A stretch of 60,578 nt of DNA, filler included, from Dugesia japonica (Eukaryota), in assembly GCA_001938525.1 (NCBI GenBank). It is 5 parts of 5 records of this genome, joined end to end, with 100 filler letters (N's around TTAATTAATTAA, not from the genome) between each part and the next. Parts side by side here need not be neighbours in the genome. Positions count along the whole stretch, not along the records: positions 22,365 to 42,009 come from MQRL01610384.1; 4 more parts are not named here. One strand, given 5' to 3'. A program made the position numbers and the translations under genes. The notes below the pieces were generated by a model. It saw only the letters and a list, made by a program, of their open reading frames with translations. It made no database searches and was not told the DNA's origin. Positions 21,851-42,109 of this stretch are shown piece after piece. Each line of letters begins with the position of its first letter. Positions within the stretch are counted from its first letter, which is position 1.

Positions 21851-22365
21851 AATTAATAATATACTCAATCAAAAGTTGAACATTTTATAGCCATTTGTTA
21901 GCCATTTCATATACATTTTTCATATAGAAAATGGCATATGAATATGAAAAGGCAACATCAGATAATGTTGAAAGAAACATTAAATGTGCCAGTAGTTTTG
22001 ATTCAAATTTATTTATTAANNNNNNNNNNNNNNNNNNNNNNNNNNNNNNNNNNNNNNNNNNNNNNNNNNNNNNNNNNNNNNNNNNNNNNNNNNNNNNNNN
22101 NNNNNNNNNNNNNNNNNNNNNCACTTTAAATAAAGCATTAAGAGAATTAAATTTAATACCACAAAGAAAAAGATATCAAAAACTAAAATATTATTTTAAT
22201 GAAAAAACTAATACATTTATTGATGATCAATTTGGTAATTATTTTTTTAATGTTAAAACTAAAANNNNNNNNNNNNNNNNNNNNNNNNNNNNNNNNNNNN
22301 NNNNNNNNTTAATTAATTAANNNNNNNNNNNNNNNNNNNNNNNNNNNNNNNNNNNNNNNNNNNNT

Positions 22366-22670
22366 TCGGCTAGCAAGTTTTTATATAATGCACACAACCC
22401 GTTTGAGCACCTGAACCCAATAATTATTTTCCTTAAGAGTTTCTGAATTTAATTGTTCATAAACATTTGACGTAATAATCTCTGCTTTAGAATTGTTTCT
22501 AACTGTCGGTGTTGTCATGTATTTTCGTGCTGAGATAAAAATTCTGTTCCATTTTTCCAATCAGAATAACCTGTTGTGGTCAGTGCTGAACTACCACTTC
22601 GTAACAATCAACAAGGAGCATAATAAATTGACTGGTTAATTTCCGAATATTCTTGATAAAGTCAACGTAT
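22366..22670 (-). mobile_element. hAT (ZMYM1/DUF4371-like) transposase relic
   Basis: TGYSDWKNGTEFLSQHENT*QH ... ENNYWVQVLKRVVCII*KLASR. Confidence 0.6.
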
Positions 22671-22739
22671 GAANNNNNNNNNNCGCAATTTTCTTCGAAA
22701 AACACTTTCATTTAAATATCTTGCTACTTTGTCTGTATA

Positions 22740-23225
22740 AACCTTTTTTGTTGTTGTTCCTCAAAGGTACCGAAGAAAAATGCTTGATATATCTATCGCA
22801 GGTCATCTAGGAGTAAATAAAACTCGAAAGAGAATTGAAAAGTTCTTCAATTGGCCAGAAATGGTAAACTATATTAAACAATCGTGTAAAGGTTGCTACC
22901 AGTGCCTAAAAGCTATCAGAAAGCTAGCTGTTAACAAAACTTCTTTTGTTACGACACCAAATATTGGGGAACCATTTTTCAGAGTTTGAATCGATATGAT
23001 TGGACTACTAAATCTATCAAACAGAAAAAAACAGGTTTATAATCGTTATAATTGATCATGCAACTAGATATTAAGAAGCTATACCAGTACCAAATATATG
23101 TACAGAAACAATGGCTAGAGAGATTTCTCATTATTTCTGTAAGGTAGGTATACCAACTGAGATTCTTACTGATCAGGAAACTAACTTTTTAAGATCAATA
23201 ATGATGTAATTATATAATTTTCTGA
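22740..23225 (+). mobile_element. Gypsy-type integrase fragment (H2C2 zinc-binding domain plus rve core)
   Basis: GHLGVNKT..RI...FNWP.M...CKGCYQC, EPFFRV*IDMIG, IIDHATRY*EAIP, GIPTEILTDQETNF. Confidence 0.85.
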
Positions 23226-23629
23226 GTCAATGAATAAATTAACAATGTTTAATTTTGTGGTTTTTGTATTAGAATACAATTTTAAATTAGGATTTCAATT
23301 AGATTCATCTATAAATTGTCACAAAACTATTTAAGTGCAATGTTTAGGAATCAATAGATAAACCAAATAGAAAATGTACGGTGTGTAAAAATAGCTTTAA
23401 AATATTTTATATTATTTTTGCGCCCCGTTTAACTTTTAGTGCCTACAAATATTCTAAAATTCGCCAGGGCAACCTTTATTCTCTCCAATACCGCCAGAGG
23501 GCCGTGCACCACAGTTTGGAAATCTATGTTCAAAACCAATAGCATCATCATCAGTATTGTCGCCAAATAGAAAGCATTTAAAAAACATTTACTTGTTTCA
23601 ACTGGACTGTAAGCAACTATACTAATGAA

Positions 23630-24780
23630 GTGAAATACAATAAATTCATTAGAAATGAGTGCAAATTCGATTTCTTAAAGAATATAGAGGAAATTACTAA
23701 TAATATGGCGTACTTTTATTATCAAACAAATGAAAAAAAGAAAATAATTCCACATGAAGAAGTAATGCCATTCACTGCTAAAACCAAATGTCATTTTTGC
23801 CGCAAATCAATAGTAAACCCAGTTCGTAACCATGTTTACTTCACAGGAAAATGCATCTTAATGACTGCAATTTAAACTGAAAAATGTATAAACAATTGCC
23901 TACTGTCTTTCAAAATTTCAGAGGATACGGTCTACATCAGATTTTGAAGTATGGATTGAACAAATTCCGAAATTGTAACGTCTCATGCATACATACAATA
24001 TCAGAAAAATTACGATCTGATTTATTGACTCGTACAAATTTATTATTTCATCATTGGACGCAGTAGTTAAAGCTTTAAAAAAAGGCAACTTTGACAAAAA
24101 ATGAATTTAAAGATCAAAGGATAACAATATCTAAGGGGATATTTTCTCACAGTTATGCAACCATTCGCAACTTCTGGTTGAAACAACAGCAGTGTCACCA
24201 AGATGAGAAGAAGTAAACAAGCAAGACTATCAAAGAGCATTAGAAATATAGACAATAACTTGTTGTAAGAATTTGTTGAATTATATGATGATGTATCCAA
24301 AGCTGGATCTATATTTGTTGGCTGATTTCTTTCAACAGTTCCGTGCAAAGTCCTAGAGCTATGCAATAACCTAGAGCTAGTAACAGTCGTTGGCATTCCG
24401 TACATGATTGGAATTCTACTAATTGGAGGTAGAGATGGTTGTACCAGCAGAAATACAGGATCAACTGAATGATTTGCCAGTAGCAACAGAACATCAAAGT
24501 ACCTCAGGGTTTAATGTTGCAAAATTTATGTTAACACACTACCCAAAGAACAATTACATTATTCACTGGAGGCTGTTAAAAATGTACCTAAGATTAGGTG
24601 TACAAATAACAAAAATGCACAAAAAAATCAAATTTAGTCAGGCTAAAGTATTCCAAAAAATATAGAATTAAATACTGAACTAAGATCAGGATGCCAAACA
24701 GAGTTAGAGAAGAATTACTATAATTTGTTAATTAACAGCCTATATGGTAAAAATGAAGTGAATATAAAGAAGATAATTTA
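23630..24780 (+). mobile_element. Polinton/Maverick protein-primed family-B DNA polymerase pseudogene
   Basis: CHFCRKSIVNPVRNHVYFTGK, PTVFQNFRGYGLHQI (exonuclease HNxxGYD-like), EVEMVVPAEIQDQLNDLPVATE, YIIHWRLLKMYLRLG...FSQ, IELNTELR...EKNYYNLLINSLYGK (polymerase motif B); frameshifted and internally deleted. Confidence 0.85.
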
Positions 24781-26979
24781 AATCTACATCAAGGTAATAA
24801 ATTTATTTTGTTGATAATATCTAATTTGTTTCTATTCAGACATGGCATTAAACGAAAATCGATTTAGAACTACTGTTGTATATGTAATTGTGATGTTCAA
24901 TAAATTTTGTATTTAAAATTGAATTTTGTTTTATTAAAAGAAAATCTGAAACACCATTTAAATATAAAAATCTTTTTTAAAATTTGTTTGTTAATAAAGA
25001 ATTTTAAAAAAGAATTAAATTATTGTATCTAAAGATAACAGATATTCTGTCGAAACATATAATATATAATAAATATATATTTAAATGGCGTTTCAGTGTT
25101 ATTTTTCTTAGATTAATTTATTTTATTAGTTGATTATTTACTTTTATTTAAAAGTTTTTTTTATAATTTTGTTTCAATATATACTCAAGTACAAAGAGCA
25201 TGAGTCATACATTTTCAATATGTGTGCAATAGGGATGAATGTTAAGCAAATATCATGAGTCATGCCTGTGCAATACAAATGCAGATTAAACAAAGACATT
25301 GCAACACGAATTTAAATTAAACAAAGGACTAATATAAAAAAAATTAAAACTTTAACAAACTGGTTAATAATGAATTTAGATAAAATTATAGACGATATGA
25401 TTGATCATATTTGTACAAATTAATCTGATGATGGTTAATCACTGCTTGTAACAACTAATCAAGATAGTAATCCTTTTTTATATGACTAATTAAATCTAAA
25501 TAAATATTTAATAATTAGATACTGATGCAGTTCAACAAGATGCTGTAGAAATAGTTGAAATAAATGCATCATTAGAAGAAGATATTAGTGAAGAAATGAT
25601 TGATACTCACCCAAATGAAGAAAATGATGATGAAGAAATAGATAAAATTAGTATACTGCAAATTGACAAAGATGTTGATGAAGAGATTTNNNNNNNNNNN
25701 NNNNNNNNNNNNNNNNNNNNNNNNNNNNNNNNNNNNNNNNNNNNNNNNNNNNNNNNNNNNNNNNNNNNNNNNNNNATATATACCAAAGTGATTGTCTATG
25801 TGTGTTACCTTGCATAAATATTTCAATTGCAACACATAGAAGTCAATAAAAATTAAAAAGAAGTCATTACAATTTCTTTTAGAAATTACATAGAAGTCCC
25901 CAAAAGATTTCAAATTTCTACGAAAAAATATTTCAAAAATAGATAAAAATCATTACAAATTACATAGAAGTCAATACAAAATGCATAGAAGACATTTCAA
26001 ATAACATAGAATAAAATACGTATTACATAGATGTCAATGAAAATTTTCAAATATACTAAAGTAATGGTGTGTGCATGTGTTTACTTTCAGAAATTATGAT
26101 TAAATATTTTAATTGATTACATGTGTGAAATAAATGTACCATAAATGCAAGTTAAAATTTTCATAAACTTTTTAAAATAAATTTTTTTATTTACAATTTG
26201 TAAGTAACTAATTTATTTATGTTTTATTTAAGTTTTAAATTTATATGGCGAATATCTCGCTACGTATTCGTAAAAATGATTTGAAAACATGGCATCTGTA
26301 TTCGTAATCTCATTTAAATTTATTGATATCTAGTTCGATACAATTTGAAAAAGAAATATCACCAAAAATCCATTTTTAAAATATCTGTNNNNNNNNNNNN
26401 NNNNNNNNNNNNNNNNNNNNNNNNNNNNNNNNNNNNNNNNNNNNNNNNNNNNNNNNNNNNNNNNNNNNNNNNNNNNNNNNNNNNNNNNNNNNNNNNNNNN
26501 NNNNNNNNNNGCTTTTCGATAAAAGTTTAGGAGACAATCCTATTTTACTTTTGAATTTTCCATCTAAATGTGAAAACCAAATTTCTAAAACACCTTGTTG
26601 GGTCGAGGGGTTCTCATTTAAAGAAAACAAATTTTCGATGATGCAATGTAAACGCAGTTTTTAAAACTGCTAATATGTTTTAGTACAAATTATTATTTCA
26701 TTATAACTATAACTATTATTGTTATAGTGTTCAGATGCGCTACACCTTTTATCTCCAGAACGAAATATTTTAGGACAAAGGTTATTTAGACAATGTATAN
26801 NNNNNNNNNNNNNNNNNNNNNNNNNNNNNNNNNNNNNNNNNNNNNNNNNGTCACACCTAACTGAACCCACGACTGCACCATGAGAACCGTCACGTCATTC
26901 GCATATAAGAATACAATGACGATACCAATACTTTGAATTCATACCGAGAAAGATGAATACCAAATATTGAACTCCTGTG

Positions 26980-27245
26980 CGAATTTATCACCCAATCAGA
27001 TTGCAAGAAATTCTATACTATGTCAAGGTTTATACCACCAGAGCTTATTTAGACAATGTATAGTCAGTCTTTAATTCTGTGTCGAATGGTACGAAATTCA
27101 AATTCATAAGTTTAAAAAAAAGAGGCTGTTTGAGTTTTCAATTTTACATCTTTAATAATATATACCATCCTAAAATTCTATACCAATGAAATTTTTATAC
27201 CACTTTACCAGTGGGGGTGGTACAATGCGCTACTATCTATATACT
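26980..27245. mobile_element. Putative Polinton right terminus
   Basis: GGGGGTGG...GCGCTACTATCTATATACT matches the termini at 17869 and 51339 and the reverse complement of 28509. Confidence 0.45.
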
Positions 27246-27534
27246 AAATTGGATTCTGAAATTAAATGAACTCTCGTAAGTTAAAACTAAATTTTATACA
27301 TTTTTTCTATTTATAAAATTCAAGTTTAAATTAATTTTTCAAATTTATCTAGTAAGAATTATTTTTTTTTCCACATAAATTATTTGACATTTCCAATATC
27401 TTATTATTTCATTTTTCAGTGACAGAATATGAAATATTAAAAAGATTTATCCGCTCTCAAGAATAGATTAAACATTCATTAAAATTTAAATTTTTAAAAT
27501 ATAAATTTATTAAAAATATGTTACATAACGTTAC

Positions 27535-27715
27535 TTGATTATTAGAGTATGCCCAAGAACCGAAAGATAATCTGCATATTTGATCATCAAATGGAAAATA
27601 GGAAATATCCAATCGACACGAACTTCGCATTGTTACAATTGGTTTCCATGACAATTGTCCACCACTATTAATAGTTACAAGGGATTTATGATATTCTGTA
27701 AATTTTTCTTGAACA
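27535..27715 (-). CDS. Nicotinic acetylcholine receptor subunit, Cys-loop exon (181 nt)
   Basis: TTTTCAG acceptor and GTAACG donor; encodes (S)VQEKFTEYHKSLVTINSGGQLSWKPIVTMRSSCRLDISYFPFDDQICRLSFGSWAYSNNQ with C-x13-C and loop B GSW. Confidence 0.95.
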
Positions 27716-27749
27716 CTGAAAATGATATATTATTATTATTATTTTTATT

Positions 27750-27800
<51 letters not shown>

Positions 27801-27850
27801 NNNNNNNNNNNNNNNNNNNNNNNNNNNNNNNNNNNNNNNNNNNNNNNNNN

Positions 27851-27898
<48 letters not shown>

Positions 27899-27904
27899 GT
27901 ATGA

Positions 27905-28132
27905 TTATTCATTTAAAAAACAAGCTTCGATCAAAATTTGTTTATTTTGTTTTTGATAATAATTATTAATTATAAAGTCAATTCCTGATGAAGACAAAGT
28001 CGAAATATAGAACTATTATCAAAAGCCAAAGAAAAACAAATTTTGATCGAAGCTTTTAGTTTAATGAATTCTGAAAAACGATCAATGGTTACGTCCAGCA
28101 ATTATTCTCGCAATAATTGCAATTGTAAACAA
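27905..28132 (+). mobile_element. Short non-autonomous Penelope-type repeat (pseudo-LTR plus inverted partial copy), copy 1
   Basis: Inverted arms AAGCTTCGATCAAAATTTG / CAAATTTTGATCGAAGCTT; 28037-28130 matches the reverse complement of 37793-37886. Confidence 0.65.
27978..28015 (+). ncRNA. Minimal type I hammerhead ribozyme motif
   Basis: TCAATTC-CTGATGA-A-GAC-AAA-GTC-GAAA-T-ATA-GAA: intact core, 3-bp stem II, palindromic AUAU stem III, short stem I (TTC/GAA). Confidence 0.6.
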
Positions 28133-28508
28133 TTATGATTATTATTATTATTATTTAATTAGAATTTTTGGCGATAAAGTTTTTTCTGATATAAATAGCT
28201 TTAAAACTAATCATCATTAAATTGAAGCATAATAATTTTTCTTTTCAGACTTAATATTTTAAAATCAAACATTTATAATAATGTGAACATTTTCTTTTTC
28301 CGATTGTTTATTAATCAAATTTGGGAGCGTTATTGTATTAAATTAAATTTTCTGGTTCAGAATAATTATTTTCAATTTACTTTAAATTCAGCATTATTAA
28401 AAATATTTTAATTTAAATTTATTTTAACAAAAATTATATGGAATTTAATTATCGAATATTGATGTTTTCAGAAATAAATTAAAAATAGCTTCTTCCAATT
28501 CTACATAT

Positions 28509-28680
28509 AGTAGGTAGATAGTAGCCCATCAGAATAGCCCACACTCCCGATAACGTGTCCTGAAAATTTTATGTTTGGAAAATTGCGTCATTTTGATTGG
28601 TTAATTTCAGAAGAAAAAATTTTAGATTTCGAATTTGATTGGTCAAAAATCTGAGTTGATAGAAAGTGGCAGTTTGGAAC
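28509..28680. mobile_element. Putative Polinton left terminus
   Basis: Begins AGTAGGTAGATAGTAG, the exact reverse complement of the 13-nt end at 17857-17869, followed by two TTTGATTGG (CCAAT) boxes. Confidence 0.5.
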
Positions 28681-29894
28681 AGCATACATTCAACCCCCCA
28701 GAATTATTGATGTATAGAAACTTAATCCCTATGTTTTTAGTTGCGAATTTAAAAATTACATCATATTAGGTAACATTACGTCACTGTTTTTAAATTTTTG
28801 CTGCGTATTTAGTTGGGAAAAATATTTGCACACAAATTATGTAATTGAATAAATTTAATCGGCGAGATTTTACGTATTAGGATTAACTGTTTTTCAAATT
28901 TTCCTATGTTTTTAGTTGGCGAGCAAAGATTTATGTGCAATTACATAACTTTTGAATCTTAAGTTTTCTAAGAGACAATATTTTTCAAGCTTTTTAGGCG
29001 AAAAAAAATTTTATGGAGTTTTTTATGGGAATCCGGGTGAACATCCCATGTTATTTAAATAATATAAAAATATAAAGTTTTTTAAATGAAATATTTTATG
29101 GAATCTGGGTGAACATCCCAAATTTTTGAGAAAAATATTTTTTATGCTCAGATTTCAAAATTTTTATACCAAACTGCTAAGAATTTTTGGTTTTTCCAAT
29201 ATTTTACATAGAATTTTTCGAAAAACTTCTTTCTTCTCAAAATTGGTCAACAAACTGTCTATTCGATAGAAAACATTTTGCTGAGTATAAATATGTTAAC
29301 CTAAAATCGGAATTGGAATTTGATTTTACAATTATATTTTTCAAAAATAAATTTTAACTGAAGAAACTTGTTAATTTATTTTATTTGAAGTAAATTATTT
29401 TGATGTGTTGTTAATTTATTTTTATTAATAAGTGTTACTATTTATTGTTTACAAAAACAAATTCTGACATAAAAGATTTATTAATAAAAAATTGACCAAG
29501 AAAATATGAAGGTAGCATGAAAAAGTAATAGATATTCAACAAAGAAAGGAAGCAGGAAAATTCCTCAGCTGAAGAAAACAATAAATTATTGAACAGAAAT
29601 AAATAAGGATCTCAATAATTATTACTATATTACTATTATTAATATATTACTATCTCAATAATAATTACTATAAGTAATCTCAAAGATTACTATAAGCCAT
29701 AACAAGTGAAGATAATTAATCTGACACAGGCCTACATGCGATAGCAACATCCCTGGAAACCCAGCAAAACTAACATCTCTACAGTTATTGATATTGTAAA
29801 NNNNNNNNNNNNNNNNTAAATATAAATAATTCATATTTATATAGAAAATGCAAACTTTTAATGAAAACAGAATAATTTTAATTAAAATATTAAC

Positions 29895-30004
29895 CTATTA
29901 AACAGGACAATATCTGGTAACCATATTTTGTTGCATGGAATTCTCAATTTGCTGACAAGTTCGTATTCACTAGTATTCCATGATAACCTTTTATCTGTCC
30001 ATTC
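29895..30004 (-). CDS. nAChR subunit exon (110 nt, loop A)
   Basis: TTTAG acceptor and GTTAAT donor; encodes [37 protein letters not shown]. Length and phase are typical of nAChR genes. Confidence 0.95.
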
Positions 30005-30939
30005 CTAAACATTTAATAAATTATTATTATTTAATAGGATTACTATTTTAAAAATTTTTCAAATCAATCTTTACCTATGTAACGCTTCTAAAGGGTTTGA
30101 AACTAAGTTTTTGCCGAGTTATGTAGTGTTTTATCTGTAGATTTAAGAGTAATGGACAATCCACAATTAATCAAAACTGTTTTATTTATTGAAATATGAA
30201 AAAATTAAAATTTTTAATTTTTGTTTAAATGTGTCTAAATGAATTCTCAACCTCAACTTTTTTAATTTTCAATGCTCGGTGAAAAACCTACTTTCCAACT
30301 TTATATTCATTATATATTTATGTATTTCATTATCCACTATATTTAGAATACCAACAAATTAGATTTAAAATTTTGTAATAAAGTTTTACACAATTTAATG
30401 CATTGATGACCCATATCGTTTGTCACTGTACATATTGAATCTAATGTAAACCAGTTATTTTCACTTTAAATATAAGGTAAAGATCTAACTATAGAGAATT
30501 TAATTTATTTTATCATCTTATCACACATTCAAAGTTACAATAAAAAAATAAAAAGTTTTCTTAATTTAAATGCATGCAATGTGTAAAGAAGAAAGTTGAT
30601 TCTCGTCTGATTGATTATAATGTTGTAGTTTCTACAAATTTGATCAATCAGATTGAGACTTTAATGAATTATAGATATTGTGAAAAAGCACTTCAATAAT
30701 CTCAGATTAAAGAGTTATGAAAATTGATGAATTTTGAAGAAAACCAAATCAAAAACATTAGCAATTCCAAGCAGAATTGATCTCCCAAAAAAGAAGCTTT
30801 ATTTCATAAATAAATCTTTTATTAGTAAAAACTTTTTTACAAATATTAACTACTAAAAACACCATATATTCAAATTCTTTCATTTCATTACCGTTTATTT
30901 TTGGTACTTTTCTTCAGAAATTACATTACTTTAAAATGT

Positions 30940-32142
30940 GTTGTTTTGTTTTTACAAGTTTAGAGAACTCTAAACAATTCATATTTAAGTTGTATTGGAT
31001 TGATAGAAGTGCATCAAGAGTATAAACATTCAAACGACTTTTATTATCATCCCAAATATTGTTCATAAGCGAAAGAGTTCTCTCCACTTTGGTTGATGTA
31101 CCTGCAAGACCAAATCCAAATTCGACTAATTTTTCCGTATTGACTAAAGCCGTTGAATTTTCATGAAAATTATTAAAACTTTTAATTCAAATGTTTTCAG
31201 GAGATAATTTTGAGTCTATCCAGCTTGAAATATTACTTTCAACAAAAAATTTCATTAGACCGTATTCCTCAAACAACAACTGTATAGATGCTAAAATGTT
31301 TATAAAGTTTTGCAATTACTACTTCTATATCAATTTCTAAAATTTCACATTCAGCACTTGATGCACTGTGAGCAATATGAGCGCAGCATCCATTTCCGAT
31401 AATATTGTGTTTCAACTCATTTTGAATTTTTCTCCAAAGATTATTCGTTCCTTTTCTATTTATACCTCTGAAATTTAAGTTTGTGTTATCTGTTGAATAT
31501 GCAATAATTTTGTCACTTAATTCGTTTTTTTGGAATGTCATCTATAAGGCTTATACAAACTGTTGGTGGTTGCTTATTATTAATTGATATTATTGTTACT
31601 CTCCAATTGATGATACTTAAAGTTTTATTAAAGAATCGAACAACAATAGCAACATTTTACTATTTTTATGATTAGATGTATCTGTCATCATTGAAGCAAA
31701 GCTTATGAATTTCATCTTAACACACTTAATCTTGTCAATAAATGGTGTGATTACCATCATGGTAATTACCGGTATCTTTGTCCGTCTTAAGGTAAATTTT
31801 TTGTCAAAAGAATTGTTTATTAATTGTAATGAACAGTTATTCTAGTGAAAATCTAAATTGTCGATTCTTTAGCAGCAATCATAAGNNNNNNNNNNNNNNN
31901 NNAGTTCTCTTGAAGAAACCGCTTAGCTTTTTTACTAGACGATCCAGCTTCGATGGATGTTTTATGGCGTTTAATTTCAATATGTTGAATAATATCTGTA
32001 CGACCACCAGAAGCAATTGAAAACTTTGTTGAGCAAATATTAAAAAAATGCTTTACATTTATCACCGTCCACTTTTATAATAAATTCAAATTCTGCGGAA
32101 TATTTCGCATTCCAGGCAGTTTTTCTTTTCTTTCCGGACATT
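30940..32142 (-). mobile_element. Internally deleted hAT-type transposase
   Basis: N-terminal zinc-finger-like ICSTKFSIASGGRTDIIQHIEIKRHK; AYSTDNTNLNF..GNGCCAHIAH (CxxH); C-terminal GTSTKVERTLSLMNNIW...SRL. Confidence 0.75.
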
Positions 32143-33358
32143 TTGGACTAAGAAATTTAATTTCTTATACCATAAAAATATTGAAAAATAATCAGTAGTT
32201 TAATTATAATTTTACTTACAGAGAAGAATTATAAAAATTTTTTCGGAACATTAACTGAATTTTTGCTAATAATTAGTTAATAAAAATAAATTTATTATTT
32301 TTCGATAACAAAATAATTAATTATGTTGATAGGTGTGAAATTAAAGGGTAATCAGCTATGCTAAATTGAAAATTGAAAATTTTCAATAACAGTTGCAACA
32401 TCACATGCTAAAATAGATTTATTTTTTCCATCAAAATAAAATTTTCAATAAAAACCGAAAACAGTTTACATTTTCTTAAAATAAGTGTTTTTAGGTTTAA
32501 ATATGATTAAAATTAAATTTAATTAAAAAAATATTCTGTGAGATAAAATTGTTAAGAAACATACAAAAAATTAAATCTAAATTTTACAGTTTACCATCGA
32601 TGAGCGTTATTTTTGGAAGACAGATTGAAAACATTCAGACATTTTAGAAAATATAGTGCACATTTGTTTGGATAACATTATGAAAATTATTTAAACAGTC
32701 GAATTTCAAAGAATATACAAAAATCCTTTTCAACATTCTTTGAAATTAAATTTCTTAACCGCTGTCACCATAAAAGAAAAATCAAAATCCTAACAAATTG
32801 AAAAATACGAGACAAATCTTGACAAAACGAGATACTGGNNNNNNNNNNNNNNNNNNNNNNNNNNNNNNNNNNNNNNNNNNNNNNNNNNNNNNNNNNNNNN
32901 NNNNNNNNNNNNNNNNNNNNNNNNNNNNNNNNNNNNNNNNNNNNNNNNNNNNNNNNNNNNNNNNNNNNNNNNNNNNNNNNNNNNNNNNNNNNNNNNNNNN
33001 NNNNNNNNNNNTTAAGACTTTAAATACTAATTTTATTGTGATATTTTTAAAATTAAAATAATTAAATTAAAAATTAAGTTTGTCGATTTATTATTTAATT
33101 AGTTATTTAATTAAACTAAATTCTATTTTAAAATTTTAGATATTTGTATAATTTTATCGAATTAACGTTTTTAATAAAATATTAATAAATTTTTTTAAAA
33201 CTTTTCAATTATCTTTGAATGAATCTTAATGAATTTTATTTAATATATCTTAAAAATACTGATATTTATCATTTAACTCTTGAAATGAAAGTTTTAATTT
33301 AATTTTTATTTAAATTAGTTATCACATACAATTTATGTAAATAAATTATAAACGATAC

Positions 33359-33403
33359 CTGATTTAGCCAAACAATTGTTGTAAGAATTTCATTTTTTTC
33401 ATC
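33359..33403 (-). CDS. nAChR subunit exon (45 nt, loop D)
   Basis: TTTTTAAG acceptor and GTATCG donor; encodes DEKNEILTTIVWLNQ, the conserved 15-codon nAChR exon. Confidence 0.93.
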
Positions 33404-33874
33404 CTTAAAAAATATTTCTTNNNNNNNNNNNNNNNNNNNNNNNNNNNNNNNNNNNNNNNNNNNNNNNNNNNNNNNNNNNNNNNNNNNNNNNNNNNNNNNN
33501 NNNNNNNNNNNNNNNNNNNNNNNNNNNNNNNNNNNNNNNNNNNNNNNNNNNNNNNNNNNNNNNNNNNNNNNNNNNNNNNNNNNNNNNNNNNNNNNNNNNN
33601 NNNNNNNNNNNNNNNNNNNNNNNNNNNNNNNAAAATCATGTTGTATTTTCCGGCTTTGCTACCTCTTAAAACAGTAGTGGTGAACCTTCATTAATGTTCC
33701 TAAGCAATATCTAAGCGGAAAATTAAGAGAGTAAACCGGTCAAATCCTATAATGCCCGGCAAATTTTCACAGAATTTCTATTTATTTTATATGTTATCTT
33801 TAATAAAAAACAAATAATTTTATAATAATTCTATTATTTATATGAAAAATATATTAATAATAATACAGAAAATC

Positions 33875-33935
<61 letters not shown>

Positions 33936-34027
33936 NNNNNNNNNNNNNNNNNNNNNNNNNNNNNNNNNNNNNNNNNNNNNNNNNNNNNNNNNNNNNNNNN
34001 NNNNNNNNNNNNNNNNNNNNNNNNNNN

Positions 34028-34095
<68 letters not shown>

Positions 34096-35528
34096 TGCTA
34101 GTATTACTATGATTATTATTAATTATGAACAAATTAATTGTGAACAATATATAAAAGATACTGATATAAAGTAGGATAAAATTGTTAATTTTTTTATTCA
34201 GAAAAACTCAACGTTTGCTGATATTGATATTCAAAAATTATAGATTTTACATTTGCATAAACAAGTCAACTTTCAATAGATATTTATCTTTTATTTTTTT
34301 TGTTGAGATCACTCTGTTGAAATAAGTGACATTTTACAAACTGTTTTATAACTTGGAGTATCAATGAGCATTTTCAAAAATAATAGAAAGTGATAATGAT
34401 TTCTACTTCTTATGATTGTAAATTTCATCTACCTTCTTACACAATTCCACTGTCATTGTACTTATTTTCGAGATTTAAACAAAAATTAGCATAACAAATC
34501 ACTTTTAGAAATCATGATTTCTTAAATATGAATACATGTTTTATTTTATATTGAAATAGTTAAAATTTTGGTTAGTCGTCATGAATAAAGGAATGCGCAC
34601 TGAACAAAGCTCCCTGTGCGAAGTCTTTGAAAGTTGTCAAATGGCTGTGCACACACACAGCTTTGAGGAAACAGTGCTTTTATGGTTTCTATGCTATGAA
34701 TTGGCGAACAAACAAATATTAATTGATATTTATCTTTTAAATAATTAAATATTATTTAAAGTCGTAAATTCCAAAAAACAACCACTGCTTTTTATCAACT
34801 ATTTTACTTATTTTTTAAAACCATATAAACTAGTTTTTTTGTGCATCCAACTGTTATATGTAACCTATATGTATTCAATTAAAATTGGACATAATTTTTA
34901 AATGTCCAGTTAATTTTGTGTATTTTTATAGACAAAGTAATATTGTAAAATACAGTGACAAAAATAAATGTAGCAGAAAAATTGATAAATACCAAGATAA
35001 TAAAATAAGGCAGCGAATAAATTTTAATCTAAGAAAACCAATTAATAACTATAATAATTTCGTCACTCTCCAGAGATGCTGCTACTCGAGGACAAACAAT
35101 CCTAGTGTTATTTGTAAACACTACTCGTTTAAATTTAGACTTTTTGTAAGCAAAATACATATTTTGTAAAAAATTTATTAATTAATTAATATCAATCTAA
35201 TTTGTTTACATAATTATTTTGTTAATACTATCCTTAAATTTATGTTTTCTCTTTATTAGGCAGAATTTCACTTGAAGTTTACACAAAGAATAATGTATTG
35301 TTTAAATAAACAGCTTTTAATACATTACAGATTAATTATCAATTATCCAAGTAATAATTTCATAAATATCGTTAATTTAAAAGAAATTAACTGTTTTGAA
35401 ATTATTGATGTGTGTGTATGTAATATTCCGAAATCGGACGCACACAATATACAATCGAGAAAACATACACAAACAAATTACATAATTGAAAATATTTATG
35501 AATTGAAATCATTTTTTTTCAAATTGCA

Positions 35529-35948
35529 ATGAAACCTATATCAATTGCAATTTTTTATTTGATAATAAAATGTGTGAGTTGCCAAATGAATATTCCGTTG
35601 AATGAAAATGGATTAATTAATCGAGAAGATTGGAAATATTGTGCTTTATCAATCTGTGGAACTAACAATCCGGGTATAAAGTTATATTAATGAAAATTAC
35701 TTTTGAAGAAATTGTGACTTATTTTTCAAGGTAATTTCACTTGGGCTGAAAAAAGGTGTTGTGAAAAGGGAAATTATTTGAATCCAGCAAAATGTTGTGT
35801 TTATATTTCTACAATGGCAAAAATAAGTTTTATAACATTTTCTGTTATCGTCATCTGGGGAATTTTGATTATAATTTGGATATTAATTTTTGTTAAAAAG
35901 AAGATCTCTAACAATTCTGATAATAATCACACAACTGCTTCTTCGTGA
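35529..35948 (+). CDS. 120-aa type I single-pass membrane protein with a six-cysteine (C-C-CC-CC) ectodomain, Shisa-like/STMC6 candidate. Exon 1 35529-35673, intron 35674-35730, exon 2 35731-35948
   Basis: Spliced translation: MKPISIAIFYLIIKCVSC-QMNIPLNENGLINREDWKYCALSICGTNNPGNFTWAEKRCCEKGNYLNPAKCCVYISTMAK-ISFITFSVIVIWGILIIIWILIFV-KKKISNNSDNNHTTASS*. 57-nt GT...TTTTTCAAG intron; AATAAA at 36009. Confidence 0.75.
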
Positions 35949-36959
35949 ATTATCAAATTTTTTCATATTTTGCAGCTATCGATTATTTGTAAATGTAAAA
36001 AGTGAATGAATAAAAATTTATAATTGTTTTATCAGTATATCTCAACAGAAAAGTTATAATTGTCCCAAATATACTATAGATGAAATACTCTAATTAAAAT
36101 TTAAATATGTAAATTTATTTTTCTTAACACCCTTCGCAATTTATATATTTTAAGGTGTATTGGAGTGAATAATTTAACGTATTTATTTTTTAGCAACTAA
36201 AATTTAGTGTTTCTTTCCGTGTTTACAATCGAAACTATAGTTATTAATTATTTAATAAAATAGATGCAATTTTTAAATTAGAAATAATATTTATGAAAAC
36301 ATAAACACGTAGCTATTTTTATATAGGATCAGAGATACAACTTGAATTGTTTTAAAGATTATTATAATTTTATCAGTATTTTTTAGAACATTCTTTTACG
36401 TTTTGATTTTGCAAAAAATATTCCTCATGATTATTTAGTTTAAAGATATAATTGCATTTAACTGTTAAATATTTTTGACAGAATTTTATTTTTAGTTCTT
36501 TTAAAATGACATTAAATTATTTATTCAAATTAAATGGTAATCACAAATGTTTTGATAGCATTTTAAAAATACATCATTTGTAGCAAATAAACATTTTATT
36601 AAATTAATTTACGTTAATAGTGATTTAAATATATGATTATTTATATCATTCATCGTATCATTATGTAAATAATTATATTTATTTATGGACTTTTTAAATT
36701 GTGATTATTAGTATTATGTCAGTCGATTGTAATTGATATTAATTATAATTATTACTCGTATTTATTATTTCCCCCTTCGTTATGCTTCTTGGTCGGCCAT
36801 AAAGCATGACATGAAGTTTTTACATAAAATATTAGGTATGGTTGAATGTATACTAATCAGGTATTTTTGGAATAATTAATTTTGGGTTAATACATTAATC
36901 AGTAGGGTTTTATTTGAATTAAATATTTATTGATTTTAACAAAAGTGCAAGTACAAATC

Positions 36960-37510
36960 AAGAAAATATTTCCCCCACATTATTTACAATTCTTTCCTAA
37001 AGATTTGGTATTTTTCGTTGAAAATATCCTTTAGTTTGGAAGTAAAGAAGTTATCAAGCCGATTTCGAAACGCGACGTTGTGATCAAAGAGATTCCTTGA
37101 ATATTGTTAGTTTGAGATCGAAACAGAGGGAAATCTGATGCAGAAAGATCTGGAGAGTAAGGTGGATGCGGAATAACCTCAAAACCGATCATAAATAGCC
37201 TTTGTAATGTTAGCAGTATGATTTCGAGCGTTATCGGGATGCAAAATGATTTCTTTCCGGTCGCTTTTCCTTAATTGCAATTTCAAGACAATAGAGTTGT
37301 GAACAGTAAATGCTAGCACTAGCGGTTATATATCTTGGAAACAATTCATAGTATATGACACCGTTTTTGTTACATCAAATGCGCAACATCATTTTACCCG
37401 GATGTCTACTAGATTTTACAAAAGAAGTTGCCTTTTCATTAGGACTAAGCAATTAATTTATCTTCTTGATTATAAATATCATGCTATAGTCAATTGATGA
37501 CCATCCATCA
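36960..37510 (-). mobile_element. Mariner transposase relic
   Basis: GKMML...GVIYYELF...YCSQL..LEIAIKEKRP and FEVIPHPPYSPDLSASDFPLF (YSPDL motif). Confidence 0.85.
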
Positions 37511-37792
37511 TAAAGGTCAATTGCTGAGTTGTTTAGTGTGAATTTTCATTAATTAAGATGTCCGTATAATCCTCATCATAGTTTTACTGTTTTCCTGTAA
37601 GTTTGAATAGTTTATGGAAAAAATTGAAATTATCACCAAATTCAAAATTTCTAAAATAATATATTAAACTATAGTATGCTATTAAGACAACTTTAATACA
37701 CAATATTTAATATACCTAACAATATTTAAAGATTTAAAATCAGAAAGTCTATATATCCATTTAAAAAAAACATTCAATCAATTTCTTTTTGT

Positions 37793-38030
37793 TTTACAAT
37801 TGCAATTATTGCGACAATAATTGTTGGACATAACCATTGGTCGTTTTTCAGAATTCATTTAAAATAAAAGCTTCGATCAAAATTTGATTTTTTTTTGGTA
37901 TTTGATAACAAATCGATATTTCGATTTTGTCTTCTTCAGGAATTGACTTTCTTCAATTCCTGAAGAAGACAAAATCGAAATATCAAATACCAAAAAAAAA
38001 CAAAATTTTGATAAAAGCTTTTATTTTAAA
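37793..38030 (-). mobile_element. Short Penelope-type repeat, copy 2, forming a long palindrome with two back-to-back hammerhead cores
   Basis: Perfect 32-bp inverted repeat 37915-37946 / 37953-37984 with a 6-nt spacer and longer imperfect arms; homologous to 27905-28132. Confidence 0.7.
37909..37946 (-). ncRNA. Minimal type I hammerhead ribozyme motif
   Basis: Minus strand reads TCAATTC-CTGAAGA-A-GAC-AAA-ATC-GAAA-T-ATC-GATTTG: CUGANGA/GAAA core, AUC cleavage triplet, stem I CAAUUC/GAUUUG. One mismatch each in stems I and II. Confidence 0.5.
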
Positions 38031-39821
38031 TCAATTTATTTTTATTGCAATTTTAAAATTGTAAATTTTTCAAGTTAAAAAAATTTTAATTTATCTGAGA
38101 AAACGACTTACGAAAATTTATATTCAATAGTTAAATCAACATTTATCAATCATTTTCAATAAAAAATATTTTCCTAAAATTTAACTCATTTCTTATTATT
38201 TTTTTTAATATTTAATTTATCTTAATATTCATATTTAATTTTTTCTCGGAAATTGAAATATTTTAGAATACACCTTTTTATTTATTTTATCTTTGTACTT
38301 TAATTATTTATTTAATAAATTCAAATTAACCATTTATTTATTCCTCATAAAATTTATGCCAATTAACTCAATATCATTATACGGATTTATTCGTTTTATA
38401 ATAATAAATTTCGGAGTATTTAAACAGACGTAAATAATAATAATAATAATAATAACAAATTAAATAATTATTTACAAAGAACTAGAAAATTAGAGAATTT
38501 GAAAAAATATGTCTCTAAAGTTTATTCATTTTGTAATTTTTAATAAATATTTATTGAATTTACTTTTTAATTTGTAAATTTTCCTAAGGAGTATTAGGAT
38601 CCCAATGATAACTAGAATGATAAACGAAATTAATCGAATACGAATCAATTATTATTAAAATTTATTCATAAAATTAAATAATTAATTCTTCTAAAGTGAA
38701 TTCGTATTTTTGAATTGGAAGTCTTTATTTTTCACAAGCTAATAATTTTTATCTATACACAAATTAAATAAAATCCCTTAAATTTATAAATAAAAAATTA
38801 TACAATAATAAATTAATTTTATTATAAGCAAATTAAAATAATTAATAGTTGGATTTGTTATTGCACTACAATTGTTATTTAAATAAATATAAATAAACAA
38901 TGCTTATACCAAACTAAATAAAATCAATTTTATTNNNNNNNNNNNNNNNNNNNNNNNNNNNNNNNNNNNNNNNNNNNNNNNNNNNNNNNNNNNNNNNNNN
39001 NNNNNNNNNNNNNNNNNNNNNNNNNNNNNNNNNNNNNNNNNNNNNNNNNNNNNNNNNNNNNNNNNNNNNNNNNNNNNNNNNNNATATCTAAATAATATTT
39101 ATTAATAACATCCACTGCAATCGACACATGATTGTCAACTGGAAGCAAGTTGATTTATTTCAATAGTGTCCTGATTTCAATAAACTATCAGAAGGCATTT
39201 TCAGCAGCACATTAGTTGTTAAAAATGTTACCTTGCAGGAAGAGCTCAAAATGTTTATAAATGACAATTGGCAAGTGAGAGGTGAGTATGGTGAACGCTG
39301 CAAAATTTCGTACCCCAAACACATACAAATTTCCTATCATAATGTATGCAACGTGTGATTGTAGATTGCCATGAAGAATAATAGGACCTACTCAGTTGAT
39401 CAATGTCAGACGAAATTGATTCATTTTTTAGGGCATCTTATTGATTTAAATTTAAATTTATCATTTAAATTTTAAAAAATCTCTTTTTAATTGATTGTTT
39501 TTCAGTGGCAGTAAGTCAAAAAATGAGCGTTGTTTGGTAGTCTTTAAGTGATGGGTATTCCAATTGGATATGCANNNNNNNNNNNNNNNNNNNNNNNNNN
39601 NNNNNNNNNNNNNNNNNNNNNNNNNNNNNNNNNNNNNNNNNNNNNNNNNNNNNTTATCTGACTTGCAAGATAGTCTTTGTTTATCTTGGCGCATTTTGCG
39701 TTTAGTTCGATGTTATTAATTTTGAAATAGTATTTTTTTTGAATATTTTTATTGTTTAAATTGTAAAATAAAATTTTTAACGTAATTTTTATAGCTAATA
39801 ACGGTGATAAAAAAATATTAC

Positions 39822-39958
39822 CAAATCGTAAATCATAATTAAAGTAATCCCTAGTTTCAAAACAATTGGCTGATAAGAACTTGGAATTGGTCGTAGATGT
39901 TTGTTATAGTTTTTAAAGATATTTTGTAAAATTTTATATTCTTGCGACTTTGTACTGG
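39822..39958 (-). CDS. nAChR subunit exon (N-terminal helix and beta1)
   Basis: TTTATTTCAG acceptor and GTAATA donor; encodes STKSQEYKILQNIFKNYNKHLRPIPSSYQPIVLKLGITLIMIYDL (E..L...Y....RP motif) and joins DEKNE in phase 0. Confidence 0.9.
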
Positions 39959-40019
39959 CTGAAATAAAGAAATAAATTAATAGATGAGTTATCAAATAAA
40001 TATATTTTTAAATAAGTAC

Positions 40020-40113
40020 ATAAGTTAAGTAAACCCAGGAAAGCCCAAAAATTTTTAGATCGACTTTCACGTTTTCCTGCACATGCTAAGTAAAACAAAG
40101 TGTAAAGAAACAT
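40020..40113 (-). CDS. Probable first (signal peptide) exon of the nAChR subunit
   Basis: ATG at 40113 opens MFLYTLFYLACAGKRESRSKNFWAFLGLLNL, in phase with the next exon via a 61-nt GT-AG intron. An alternative phase-1 donor exists at about 40070, so the exon end is uncertain. Confidence 0.5.
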
Positions 40114-40722
40114 ATCCNAGATTTAATTGAATTTATTAATAAAGTAAAATTAATTAATTTTATTAATTAATTAAATTAAATAGTTAAATAATTGTGTGTC
40201 ATCAATGATACTATGGACTATGTCAGGTTAAAATGTTAGTAGAATAATGAAAAGCTGATGAATGAAAATGACAAACGAAAGTTAAAAAAACAAACAAAAT
40301 CGAACTAGAAAAAAGCTAGAATATCAAAAATAATGCAATTATTCACAAGTAAATAAAATAAACTGTGTCAGGGTATTATACCAGACAAATTAACTTAAAA
40401 TATCTCATCTAAACGGCATCTTATTAAATNATAAATCATCGTGTTGGTTGATTTGATATAGATTGATTTGGTTTAGATAGCGATACACTTCTATACTGTA
40501 ATATAAAGTTATTCTTCTAAGTAGCATTGATGATTCGAGTAAAGATATTAATGTAATGTAATAATATATCACTGAATAAGACCTAAATAAAAATGACGAA
40601 TGTCAGAAAATTTAAAATACAAGTATAAGATTATATACAAGACTATATTGTGTAAATTCTGTAAGTGATAAAATATCAATAAAAATTTCATTAAAAATGC
40701 AACTTATTGCATTGTTCTAAAT

Positions 40723-40799
40723 TAATTGATTTCACAACTATTGATTTCACAACTATTGATTTCACAACTATTGATTTCACAATTAATTGATTTCACAAG
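40723..40799. repeat. 15-bp tandem repeat AACTATTGATTTCAC, 5 copies
   Basis: Visible tandem iteration. Confidence 0.9.
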
Positions 40800-42109
40800 A
40801 CAAAGTTTCAATAGCTAAATTAAATCAATGAGCGCCAGATACCTTTGTAATAGAGTCACCCACGCAGCCAAAATGTTGGTCACAAGGTGGCCAGTCAGAT
40901 CTTGGAAATATATACTATTTATTGTTAAATATTATTTAAATTTAAAGCTATACTCTAACAGTAATCATTATTATTATAATGATAATAATAACTGTAATAA
41001 TGAAGGGGTTCCAGGTGTGCTTCATTGCAAAATATCGTTATTGTCCTATTTCTATTACGATCCGTAGGAGTCCTAAATTCCACAGACATTCCCAAGTATT
41101 AGATCGAGAGTTTTAGTTTTCGATCCACTAATTCTGGTTACCTTAAGTTTATGCCAGGCTCGTTAGAGTTCGGATTATCTGATTTGTGCTTGTTCTTGGT
41201 ATGTCGATTATGAATAACATATTGAAGAATCCCTTTCAGTAGCGATTCTTTTACTAATATTTGGGTGCCTGATGCGCTAACATGAATAAATTCAAACAAC
41301 TTACACTTCCTTTATATTATAAATTGACTAATAATAAAATCGTCAAATAATATTCATTAAAGTCATAAGAGTGCTTTGCTATTACATTAAGTAAAATATT
41401 AATTACTAATGGTCAATTGAACCCGTGGTATAAGCCATCACGTATGATCATGATGAAATGAATTCGTAATATTAAAAAGGACAAACAAATTCATAAATCT
41501 AAAGGTTATCCAAAATCTATTGTGGCAACATAACCATTAACCTTTCTTATCTCGTTAAAATTATCATTGCTATTATTATATTCTTTATTAATTATAATTG
41601 TTAGTTAGTGATAAACTTTCTGAAAAGTCCATTAAATTCAATAAATTTTTATTTATAACACAAAATTTCATANNNNNNNNNNNNNNNNNNNNNNNNNNNN
41701 NNNNNNNNNNNNNNNNNNNNNNNNNNNNNNNNNNNNNNNNNNNNNNNNNNNNNNNNNNNNNNNNNNNNNNNNNNNNCGATTTTCAATTTTTAACCCTTAT
41801 AATAGTAATCTTCAAATTTATAAATAAGTACTAATAATCTATAAAGCATTCTTTAAACACTAAATAAAATAATTAAAATAACTACTTAAGTGTATTAAAT
41901 CTAATAGGCAATGTATTACTCATAATATTCTCCAAAATACATTAAAACTATCACATGAACTATACATAGTATGTTCTTAAAATAATTATATGACTAAATA
42001 TTGTAAAAANNNNNNNNNNNNNNNNNNNNNNNNNNNNNNNNNNNNNNNNNNNNTTAATTAATTAANNNNNNNNNNNNNNNNNNNNNNNNNNNNNNNNNNN
42101 NNNNNNNNN

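What the first reader, a model, noticed from the sequence alone, without database searches (positions are those of the whole stretch)
35529..35948. Hidden Shisa-like (C-C-CC-CC) membrane microprotein nested antisense in the nAChR intron
Seen in the sequence, and absent from the ORF track: removing one 57-nt GT-AG intron gives 120 aa. It has a signal peptide, an ectodomain with C-x4-C-x14-CC-x10-CC and an NFT sequon, a 24-residue TM, a KKK stop-transfer, a short tail and a downstream AATAAA. Established knowledge: C-C-CC-CC before a single TM is the signature of STMC6/Shisa-like families (WBP1/VOPP1, TMEM92, CYYR1, CX), and vertebrate Shisa proteins are auxiliary subunits of AMPA and GABA-A receptors. 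Inference: a minimal member without a PY motif sits inside a Cys-loop receptor gene and could be a co-regulated auxiliary or trafficking partner. The nesting may also be coincidental.
Basis: partly seen in the sequence, partly recalled or inferred. Interest (0 to 1): 0.82.

Follow-up and report, generated by a model that had tools for sequence, protein, structure and literature searches.

The report
Small cysteine-rich membrane gene in receptor intron
A real, polyadenylated mini-gene lies antisense inside an intron of a nicotinic-receptor gene and can encode a 120-residue single-pass membrane protein, but its tiny intron is often left in, it has no detectable relatives, and nothing links it to the receptor.

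Summary
Removing 35674-35730 (57 nt, GT..AG) joins 35529-35673 to 35731-35948 into 120 codons. These encode a signal peptide, C-x4-C-x14-CC-x10-CC, an NFT sequon, a 24-residue TM segment, KKK and a 17-residue tail. No simulated ORF carried this whole feature set.

RNA shows a real plus-strand gene. One RNA contig ends at 36029 with a non-genomic A17 tail, 15 nt after AATAAA.

Splicing is mixed. Contigs from two studies retain the 57 nt, which carries three in-frame stops, so they encode only a 53-aa secreted-type peptide. In a third study, the depth pattern of one raw read pair cannot come from two contiguous reads. It matches a read that skips the predicted intron, though other skips fit too.

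The host is a nAChR-type subunit gene on the minus strand. The mini-gene sits in its 6.4-kb intron (39821-33404).

Family membership is not shown. The exon pieces have no Pfam hit. Exon 2 has no HMMER hit among 1.84 billion proteins. Language-model similarity to CYYR1, DUF2650 and Shisa-like is weak. The PY/proline-rich tail is absent.

Most likely this is an orphan type I membrane microprotein with an STMC6-like layout, and the nesting is coincidental.

The parts
35503..35528 (+). Minimal 5'UTR. The transcript start is at or upstream of 35503.
   Evidence: A raw RNA read of run X22 begins at about 35503 (13 bases in bin 35422-35515). The ATG at 35529 is the first ATG downstream of that point.
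35529..35673 (+). Exon 1 coding part: signal peptide (residues 1-18) and the first two ectodomain Cys (C-x4-C). It ends in phase 1.
   Evidence: Covered by RNA contigs X9 and X10 from 35552/35554 and by X22 reads.
35674..35730 (+). 57-nt GT..AG intron that preserves the frame and carries three in-frame stops. It is retained in the assembled transcripts of two studies and probably spliced out in one read of a third.
   Evidence: The donor GTATAA and acceptor TTTTTCAAG resemble host-gene sites GTATCG and TTTTTTAAG. GC is 0.19.
35731..35948 (+). Exon 2 coding part: NFT sequon, CC-x10-CC, a 24-residue TM, KKK, a 17-aa tail and the TGA stop.
   Evidence: GC of 0.284 equals exon 1 and exceeds the UTR and flanks.
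35949..36029 (+). 3'UTR with AATAAA (36009-36014) and the poly(A) addition site at 36029.
   Evidence: The X9 contig (493 nt, depth 23) ends at 36029 followed by 17 A. The genome there reads TTATCAG, not A.
35529..35690 (+). Alternative 53-aa ORF of the intron-retaining mRNA: a signal peptide plus a 35-aa peptide with one C-x4-C pair and no TM.
   Evidence: ORF list. Retention is shown by contigs X9 (35554-36029) and X10 (35552-35983), both without gaps.
39822..39958 (-). Host nAChR-type subunit exon (start of the ligand-binding domain), upstream of the host intron.
   Evidence: Pfam Neur_chan_LBD positions 2-39. Splice sites TTTCAG| and |GTAATA.
33359..33403 (-). Host 45-nt exon (DEKNEILTTIVWLNQ), downstream of the host intron that holds the mini-gene.
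   Evidence: Acceptor TTTTTTAAG|, donor |GTATCG.
29895..30004 (-). Host exon with loop A (WLPDIVLFN).
   Evidence: PDB phmmer: the best hits are all nAChR subunits, E = 1.5e-11. Boundaries.
27535..27715 (-). Host exon with the Cys-loop (C-x13-C, FPFD) and loop B (GSWAY).
   Evidence: Pfam Neur_chan_LBD 115-156, E = 1e-13. PDB phmmer nAChR alpha-9, beta-3 and alpha-7, E down to 6e-12. Boundaries.

Best explanation
This is a real two-exon mini-gene on the + strand that is absent from the protein collections searched. It is transcribed from at or before 35503 and polyadenylated at 36029. It lies inside the 6.4-kb second coding intron of a minus-strand nAChR-type subunit gene.

Its single 57-nt intron is spliced inefficiently, which gives two mRNAs:
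- The spliced mRNA encodes a 120-aa type I single-pass membrane glycoprotein. It has a cleaved signal peptide, an ectodomain of about 61 aa whose six Cys probably form three disulfides, one N-glycan site, an aromatic-rich TM helix, a KKK stop-transfer and a short Ser/Thr/Asn tail.
- The intron-retaining mRNA stops inside the intron and encodes a 53-aa secreted-type peptide.

The protein is a lineage-restricted orphan. Its layout copies STMC6/Shisa-like adaptors, but it lacks their PY tail. If it works like them, it would act through ectodomain or TM contacts with other membrane proteins in the secretory pathway or at the surface, not by recruiting NEDD4-type ligases. The nesting in the receptor gene is most likely coincidental.

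Shown: the transcript, its strand, the poly(A) site, the retained isoform and the host gene identity. Inferred: the spliced isoform (one read, from depth arithmetic), translation, topology, disulfides and function.
For: ORF anatomy is exactly as described.

The poly(A)-tailed RNA contig ends 15 nt after AATAAA. RNA contigs from two studies and raw reads from a third cover the gene.

The X22 depth bins cannot be produced by two contiguous reads of 141 nt or less. A read skipping 35673-35729 reproduces them exactly.

All in-frame stops between 35529 and 35948 fall inside the 57-nt GT..AG segment.

Exon-like GC appears in both exons but not in the intron or UTR.

The joint feature set was absent from 3719 simulated ORF models.

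The candidate's splice-site types match those the host gene uses, including an AAG acceptor and a GTAT donor.

In the spliced model the stop codon sits 61 nt before AATAAA, giving a normal 81-nt 3'UTR.
Against: The two assembled transcripts (X9 at depth 23, X10 at depth 2.9) retain the intron, and no joint was reported. The 120-aa frame is therefore not the major RNA form in those samples.

The spliced read is a single read inferred from binned depth. Other skips of 26-62 nt also fit the bins.

No homologue was found. Two word searches were empty, HMMER on exon 2 gave 0 hits, and neither piece has a Pfam family. Conservation, the usual proof of coding, is therefore missing.

Hydrophobic, Lys-rich ORFs are favoured by 25% GC composition.

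The features tested were chosen after seeing the sequence.
Confidence: 0.55

Rival explanations
1. The gene is effectively single-exon. Its functional product is the 53-aa signal-peptide-bearing peptide (35529-35690), secreted with one C-x4-C disulfide loop. The downstream Cys/TM frame is untranslated 3'UTR, either by chance or as a relic.
For: Both assembled RNA contigs, from two independent studies, run through the 57 nt without a gap, one with a poly(A) tail at depth 23. No joint was listed.
Against: Exon 2 has exon-like GC, unlike the true 3'UTR. A 72-codon open frame in the same frame as exon 1 with a coherent TM/KKK/CC-CC set is very unlikely by chance. All stops are confined to a GT..AG-bounded 57 nt. 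The X22 bins require a skipped read. The 35-aa mature peptide has no dibasic or amidation sites and no relatives.
Confidence: 0.22
2. It is a true but minimal member of the STMC6/Shisa-like superfamily. It serves as an auxiliary or trafficking partner of the nAChR subunit in whose intron it is nested.
For: The C*C*CC*CC pattern before a single aromatic-rich TM matches the published family signature (PMC5578492 S1 Fig legend). CYYR1, DUF2650 and Shisa-like-2A clusters appear among the language-model neighbours of exon 2. A precedent exists for a small single-pass nAChR auxiliary protein encoded inside a receptor-related gene: EAT-18 in lev-10 (PMC7173930).
Against: The neighbour scores of 0.79-0.82 and recognition of 1983 are below the tool's thresholds, and unrelated viral clusters and Flu M2 rank higher. 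The pieces have no Pfam hit, even at E up to 10. HMMER gave 0 hits. There is no PY motif, proline-rich tail or PDZ-type C-terminus. The gene is antisense to the host and has its own poly(A) site. No expression or interaction data exist. Transcript abundance varies about 100-fold or more between RNA runs, with no host data to compare.
Confidence: 0.05
3. It is a non-coding or spurious polyadenylated transcript from an AT-rich intron, for example a cryptic promoter plus a chance AATAAA. Neither ORF is translated.
For: No homologues for either ORF. AATAAA and TATA-like strings are frequent at 25% GC. One-intron ORFs of 100 aa or more arise by chance about 1.5 times per 18.5 kb.
Against: The first ATG of the transcript has a good context and opens a signal peptide. 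The feature set was never seen in simulations. GC is raised in just the two coding parts. The transcript recurs in at least 11 studies' runs at partial to high word share.
Confidence: 0.08

Closest known systems
STMC6 / Shisa-like single-pass adaptors (CYYR1, WBP1/VOPP1, TMEM92, DUF2650, CX, Shisa-like/FAM159)
   Same: Signal peptide, six ectodomain Cys arranged C*C*CC*CC directly before one aromatic-rich TM helix, and small size.
   Different: No proline-rich tail and no [LP]PxY motif. The tail is 17 aa without Pro or Tyr. There is no profile or HMMER similarity and only sub-threshold language-model similarity.
Vertebrate Shisa6-9 (CKAMP) auxiliary subunits of AMPA / GABA-A receptors
   Same: A single-pass Cys-rich protein that could in principle accompany a ligand-gated channel.
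   Different: Shisa proper has a C*C*CC*C*CC*C pattern, a long proline-rich tail and a PDZ-binding C-terminus (PMC10531659). This protein has six Cys, a 17-aa tail ending in ASS, and no Shisa_N hit.
C. elegans EAT-18, obligate auxiliary protein of the EAT-2 nAChR
   Same: A very small (71/78 aa) single-pass membrane protein with no vertebrate homologues. Its first exon lies in an intron of a gene for another nAChR accessory protein, lev-10 (PMC7173930).
   Different: EAT-18 has the opposite topology (N-terminus inside), shares exons with lev-10 on the same strand, and its function is shown experimentally. Here the gene is antisense and independent, and nothing has been tested.
Taxonomically restricted microprotein genes nested in long introns, with retained short introns
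   Same: A short two-exon gene, no relatives, its own poly(A) site, a host intron that also carries low-complexity repeats and masked or gapped stretches, and variable expression.
   Different: Nothing distinguishes it from this ordinary class except the STMC6-like Cys pattern.

Membership tests
STMC6 / Shisa-like superfamily | N-terminal signal peptide | tested here: met
   Residues 1-18 have an MK n-region, an 11-residue hydrophobic core and a VSC|Q cleavage-type site. Hydropathy window 1.4-1.7. This is a heuristic only; no SignalP was available.
STMC6 / Shisa-like superfamily | Six ectodomain cysteines in the order C*C*CC*CC (PMC5578492) | tested here: met
   C-x4-C-x14-CC-x10-CC in the spliced model. 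The pattern needs the splice, because C1 and C2 are in exon 1 and the two CC pairs are in exon 2.
STMC6 / Shisa-like superfamily | Single TM helix shortly after the Cys domain, with aromatic residues | tested here: met
   Residues 80-103 have a hydropathy peak of 3.09 and contain F, F, W, W, F. The TM lies 8 residues after the last Cys.
STMC6 / Shisa-like superfamily | Proline-rich cytoplasmic region with PY ([LP]PxY) motifs (PMC6125347, PMC11399591) | tested here: not met
   The tail is 17 aa (KKKISNNSDNNHTTASS) with no Pro and no Tyr.
STMC6 / Shisa-like superfamily | Detectable sequence or profile similarity to a member family (Pfam Shisa_N, CYYR1, WBP-1, DUF2650, CX) | tested here: not met
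   Pfam scans of exon 1 (48 aa) and exon 2 (71 aa, holding four of the six Cys plus the TM) at E up to 10 gave none of these families. phmmer of exon 2 against 1.84 billion proteins gave 0 hits. Atlas features were 0.79-0.82, below the 0.9 lead level. The whole spliced protein has no reference and was not scanned.
Shisa proper (Shisa1-9) | Cys pattern C*C*CC*C*CC*C and a Shisa_N domain (PMC10531659) | tested here: not met
   Only six Cys, in a different pattern, and no Shisa_N hit.
Receptor auxiliary subunit (Shisa6-9 type) | C-terminal PDZ-binding motif [ST]x[VLI] | tested here: not met
   The C-terminus is A-S-S.
Receptor auxiliary subunit (any type) | Physical or functional interaction with, or co-expression with, the receptor | not testable with these tools
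   No interaction job was run because nothing beyond neighbourhood suggests binding.
Gene nested in an intron of a nAChR-type gene | Flanking exons of one Cys-loop receptor gene on the opposite strand, in consecutive order | tested here: met
   Minus-strand exons map to LBD 2-39 (39958-39822), the 45-nt DEKNE..WLNQ exon (33403-33359), about 59-94 (30004-29895) and about 97-157 (27715-27535). All best PDB hits are nAChR subunits.

The most novel reading that the evidence does not exclude
The 120-aa protein is a stripped-down STMC6-type single-pass protein that acts as an auxiliary or trafficking subunit of the nicotinic receptor subunit whose intron hosts it. Regulated retention of the 57-nt intron would switch it between a membrane-anchored form and a 53-aa secreted form. 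This would be a flatworm-style counterpart of EAT-18 within lev-10.
Probability: 0.04. Interest if true: 0.75.

Novelty: new member of a known kind. Interest (0 to 1): 0.3.

Why it matters
If the 120-aa protein is made, it adds an unannotated, lineage-restricted membrane microprotein to this genome. It also shows how two-exon genes with short introns escape ORF-based annotation in very AT-rich genomes. The retained-versus-spliced choice would yield a secreted or a membrane-anchored product from one 0.5-kb mRNA, which can be tested directly. The more exciting idea, a receptor auxiliary subunit nested in its client's gene, has no support at present, so the finding is of modest interest.

Tried and rejected
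- Word-index protein searches with exon 2 (71 aa) and with the 53-aa ORF found no candidate at all, not even a self hit.
- An exhaustive HMMER search of exon 2 gave 0 hits at E <= 1e-3.
- Pfam on the two exon pieces gave only weak TM-driven matches below cut-off, such as NICE-3 and adenovirus E3A.
- Atlas features for the 53-aa ORF gave nothing above 0.76.
- tblastn and blastn of the gene against the rest of the piece found no paralogue or repeat copy, so it is not part of a repeated element within the piece.
- Rfam at gathering threshold over the piece gave no family.
- Pei & Grishin 2012 (PMC3295595) is not held. The family definition was taken from papers that cite it.
It was therefore neither scanned whole against Pfam nor folded, and no complex prediction was attempted.
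- The organism could not be named, because run and organism labels are coded and the exon-level atlas hit only says Eukaryota. 'Flatworm' is therefore unverified.
- Pfam did not confirm the mariner-like or hAT-like look of several intronic ORFs. Only an integrase zinc-binding domain at 22780-22986 passed.

Full report
**1. The observation.** The piece (22365-42009) has 25% GC. On the + strand an ATG at 35529, with G at -3, opens a 53-codon ORF that ends at TAA 35688-35690. Removing 35674-35730 joins it to 35731-35948 and gives 120 codons. The removed segment is 57 nt, from GTATAA to TTTTTCAAG.

- an 18-residue signal-type N-terminus
- C-x4-C-x14-CC-x10-CC
- an NFT sequon across the junction
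- a 24-residue hydrophobic segment at residues 80-103 (hydropathy up to 3.09)
- KKK, then a 17-residue tail
- AATAAA at 36009-36014

The whole stretch 35529-35948 is therefore a single genomic frame. Its only three stops (35688, 35691, 35715) all lie inside the GT..AG-bounded segment.

**2. Is it more than chance?** The bare ability to build a one-intron ORF of 100 aa or more is not unusual. Markov-simulated sequence of this composition yields about 1.5 such models per 18.5 kb, and 77 of 100 simulations had at least one.

The feature set is a different matter. Among 3719 simulated models:

| Feature | Share of models |
|---|---|
| Signal-like start | 20% |
| TM segment | 2.2% |
| Signal + TM + K/R cluster | 0.05% |
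| Even number (six or more) of ectodomain Cys | 0.1% |
| Two CC doublets | 0.08% |
| All features together | none |

These figures come, and the features were chosen after seeing the sequence. GC content is 0.29 and 0.284 in the two exons, like the host exons at 0.28-0.34. It is 0.19 in the 57 nt, 0.17 in the 3'UTR and 0.20-0.23 in the flanks. The gene is single-copy within the piece.

**3. RNA evidence.** Runs from at least 11 studies hold part or most of 35500-36020. Several very small runs (7-77 million letters) are among them, which implies high expression in some samples. Four runs were laid on 34200-37000.

- X9 gave a 493-nt contig at depth 23 that covers 35554-36029 without a gap. It continues with 17 A that are not in the genome, which reads TTATCAG after 36029. 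This is a genuine poly(A) tail, 15 nt after AATAAA, and it fixes the strand as +.
- X10, from another study, gave a contig covering 35552-35983 without a gap.
- Both contigs retain the 57 nt, and no joint was listed.
- X22 (raw oligo-dT reads, about a quarter of the run read) laid only one pair.
- X21 laid nothing on the gene.

Transcript abundance therefore differs by about two orders of magnitude between samples.

Single-read joints are not tabulated, so I reconstructed the X22 pair from its binned depths: 0.14, 1, 0.98, 0.72 and 0.13, which total 279 bases. No two contiguous reads of 141 nt or less reproduce those bins. One read must skip 26-62 nt, either 26 nt inside 35704-35797 or a stretch ending exactly at 35729. 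The predicted intron, with its cut shifted by the ambiguous G, reproduces every bin. An unspliced pair would give 0.70 and 1.0 instead of 0.98 and 0.72.

Both isoforms therefore probably exist. Retention dominates in two samples. The spliced form rests on one read, and that read is inferred.

**4. Splice signals.** The host gene's own sites in this piece are the donors GTAATA, GTATCG, GTTAAT and GTAACG, and the acceptors TTTCAG, TTTTTTAAG, GTTTAG and TTTCAG. The candidate's GTATAA donor and TTTTTCAAG acceptor are of the same kinds. The less common AAG acceptor is used by the host's conserved 45-nt exon.

**5. Surroundings.** Minus-strand exons encode a Cys-loop receptor ligand-binding domain, in consecutive order:

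| Host exon (minus strand) | Content | Evidence |
|---|---|---|
| 39958-39822 | Pfam Neur_chan_LBD positions 2-39 | |
| 33403-33359 | 45-nt exon DEKNEILTTIVWLNQ | |
| 30004-29895 | loop [10 protein letters not shown]; best PDB hits all nAChR subunits, E = 1.5e-11 | |
| 27715-27535 | Cys-loop with FPFD, and GSWAY; E = 6e-12 to nAChR alpha-9, beta-3 and alpha-7 | |

The host is therefore a nAChR-type subunit. The mini-gene lies antisense in the 6.4-kb intron 39821-33404. That intron also holds low-complexity repeats and masked or gapped stretches.

**6. Relatives and family.** None of the searches found a relative:
- Word searches with exon 2 and with the 53-aa ORF found nothing, not even a self hit. 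The protein is therefore not in the public collections searched.
- HMMER of exon 2 against 1.84 billion representatives gave no hit at E <= 1e-3.
- Pfam gave no family for either piece.
- Language-model neighbours of exon 2 include CYYR1 (0.82), DUF2650 (0.80) and Shisa-like-2A (0.79). Unrelated giant-virus clusters and Flu M2 score higher, all scores are below 0.9, and recognition (1983) is under the tool's 2300 mark. This is a resemblance in kind, not evidence of homology.

The published signature of Shisa-like/STMC6 proteins is a signal peptide, C*C*CC*CC, a single aromatic-rich TM and PY motifs in a proline-rich tail. The first three are met here. The PY/proline tail is not met, and neither is profile similarity. 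Shisa proper has an eight-Cys pattern and PDZ-type ends, which are also not met.

I therefore do not file this protein as a member. It has an STMC6-like architecture.

**7. How it most likely works.**

Shown:
- a plus-strand, polyadenylated mRNA of about 0.5 kb
- an intron-retaining isoform that can only give the 53-aa signal-peptide-bearing peptide

Inferred:
- A spliced isoform gives a 120-aa type I membrane glycoprotein with three ectodomain disulfides.
- The retained isoform has no downstream exon junction, so it should escape junction-dependent decay and accumulate. This could explain its dominance in assemblies.
- Without a PY tail, ER-retrieval signal or PDZ motif, any adaptor-like action would have to go through the ectodomain or the TM helix.

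A role with the host receptor is possible in principle. EAT-18, a 71/78-aa single-pass obligate auxiliary protein of the EAT-2 nAChR, has its first exon inside an intron of lev-10. Nothing here speaks for such a role, though. The gene is antisense and independent, and no co-expression or binding data exist.

**8. Verdict.** The gene is real. The 120-aa product is plausible but is not the dominant RNA form in two samples. Family membership and the receptor link are unsupported. This is a new orphan microprotein gene of an ordinary class, a nested and lineage-restricted one, with an STMC6-like layout. Interest is modest.

**Limits.**
- The organism could not be identified, so 'flatworm' is unverified.
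- The whole spliced protein could not be submitted to the Pfam, structure or complex tools because it has no reference.
- Related eukaryotic genomes are outside the collections offered, so the absence of orthologues is weak evidence.

Noticed in passing
window 33359-33403 (-): The host receptor gene has a 45-nt exon (DEKNEILTTIVWLNQ), the size I recall for the matching short exon of vertebrate nAChR genes (from memory, not checked here). It uses an AAG acceptor and abuts an N run (33421-33631).
   Followed up: partly
window 40071-40113 (-): A possible first coding exon of the host receptor: ATG followed by a short hydrophobic stretch (MFLYTLFYLACAGK), a GTGAAA donor and phase 1, which fits the phase of the acceptor at 39959/39958. 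Read by eye only.
   Followed up: no
window 22780-22986 (+): A retroelement fragment: Pfam Integrase_H2C2 zinc-binding domain, E = 2.3e-11.
   Followed up: partly
window 37031-37319 (-) and 39160-39324 (-): Short ORFs with an HPPYSPDL / SPYSP motif that looks like decayed mariner-type transposase. Pfam did not confirm this at E <= 0.01.
   Followed up: partly
window 34677-34896, 34739-34756, 35164-35190, 36631-36653: RNA contigs and reads of X9 and X21 lie only partly on these intronic spots and run on into unlike sequence. They are probably expressed copies of dispersed repeats elsewhere in the genome, not part of the mini-gene.
   Followed up: no
window 27655-27969 and 33842-34174: Long trinucleotide runs (ATT/AAT and CTT-like), partly masked by N, give spurious poly-Ile/Asn/Leu ORFs in the ORF list.
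   Followed up: no
window 35498-35506 (+): A two-codon upstream ORF (ATG AAT TGA) sits just 5' of the first RNA read start at about 35503. Whether it is in the mRNA depends on the true transcription start, which was not determined.
   Followed up: no
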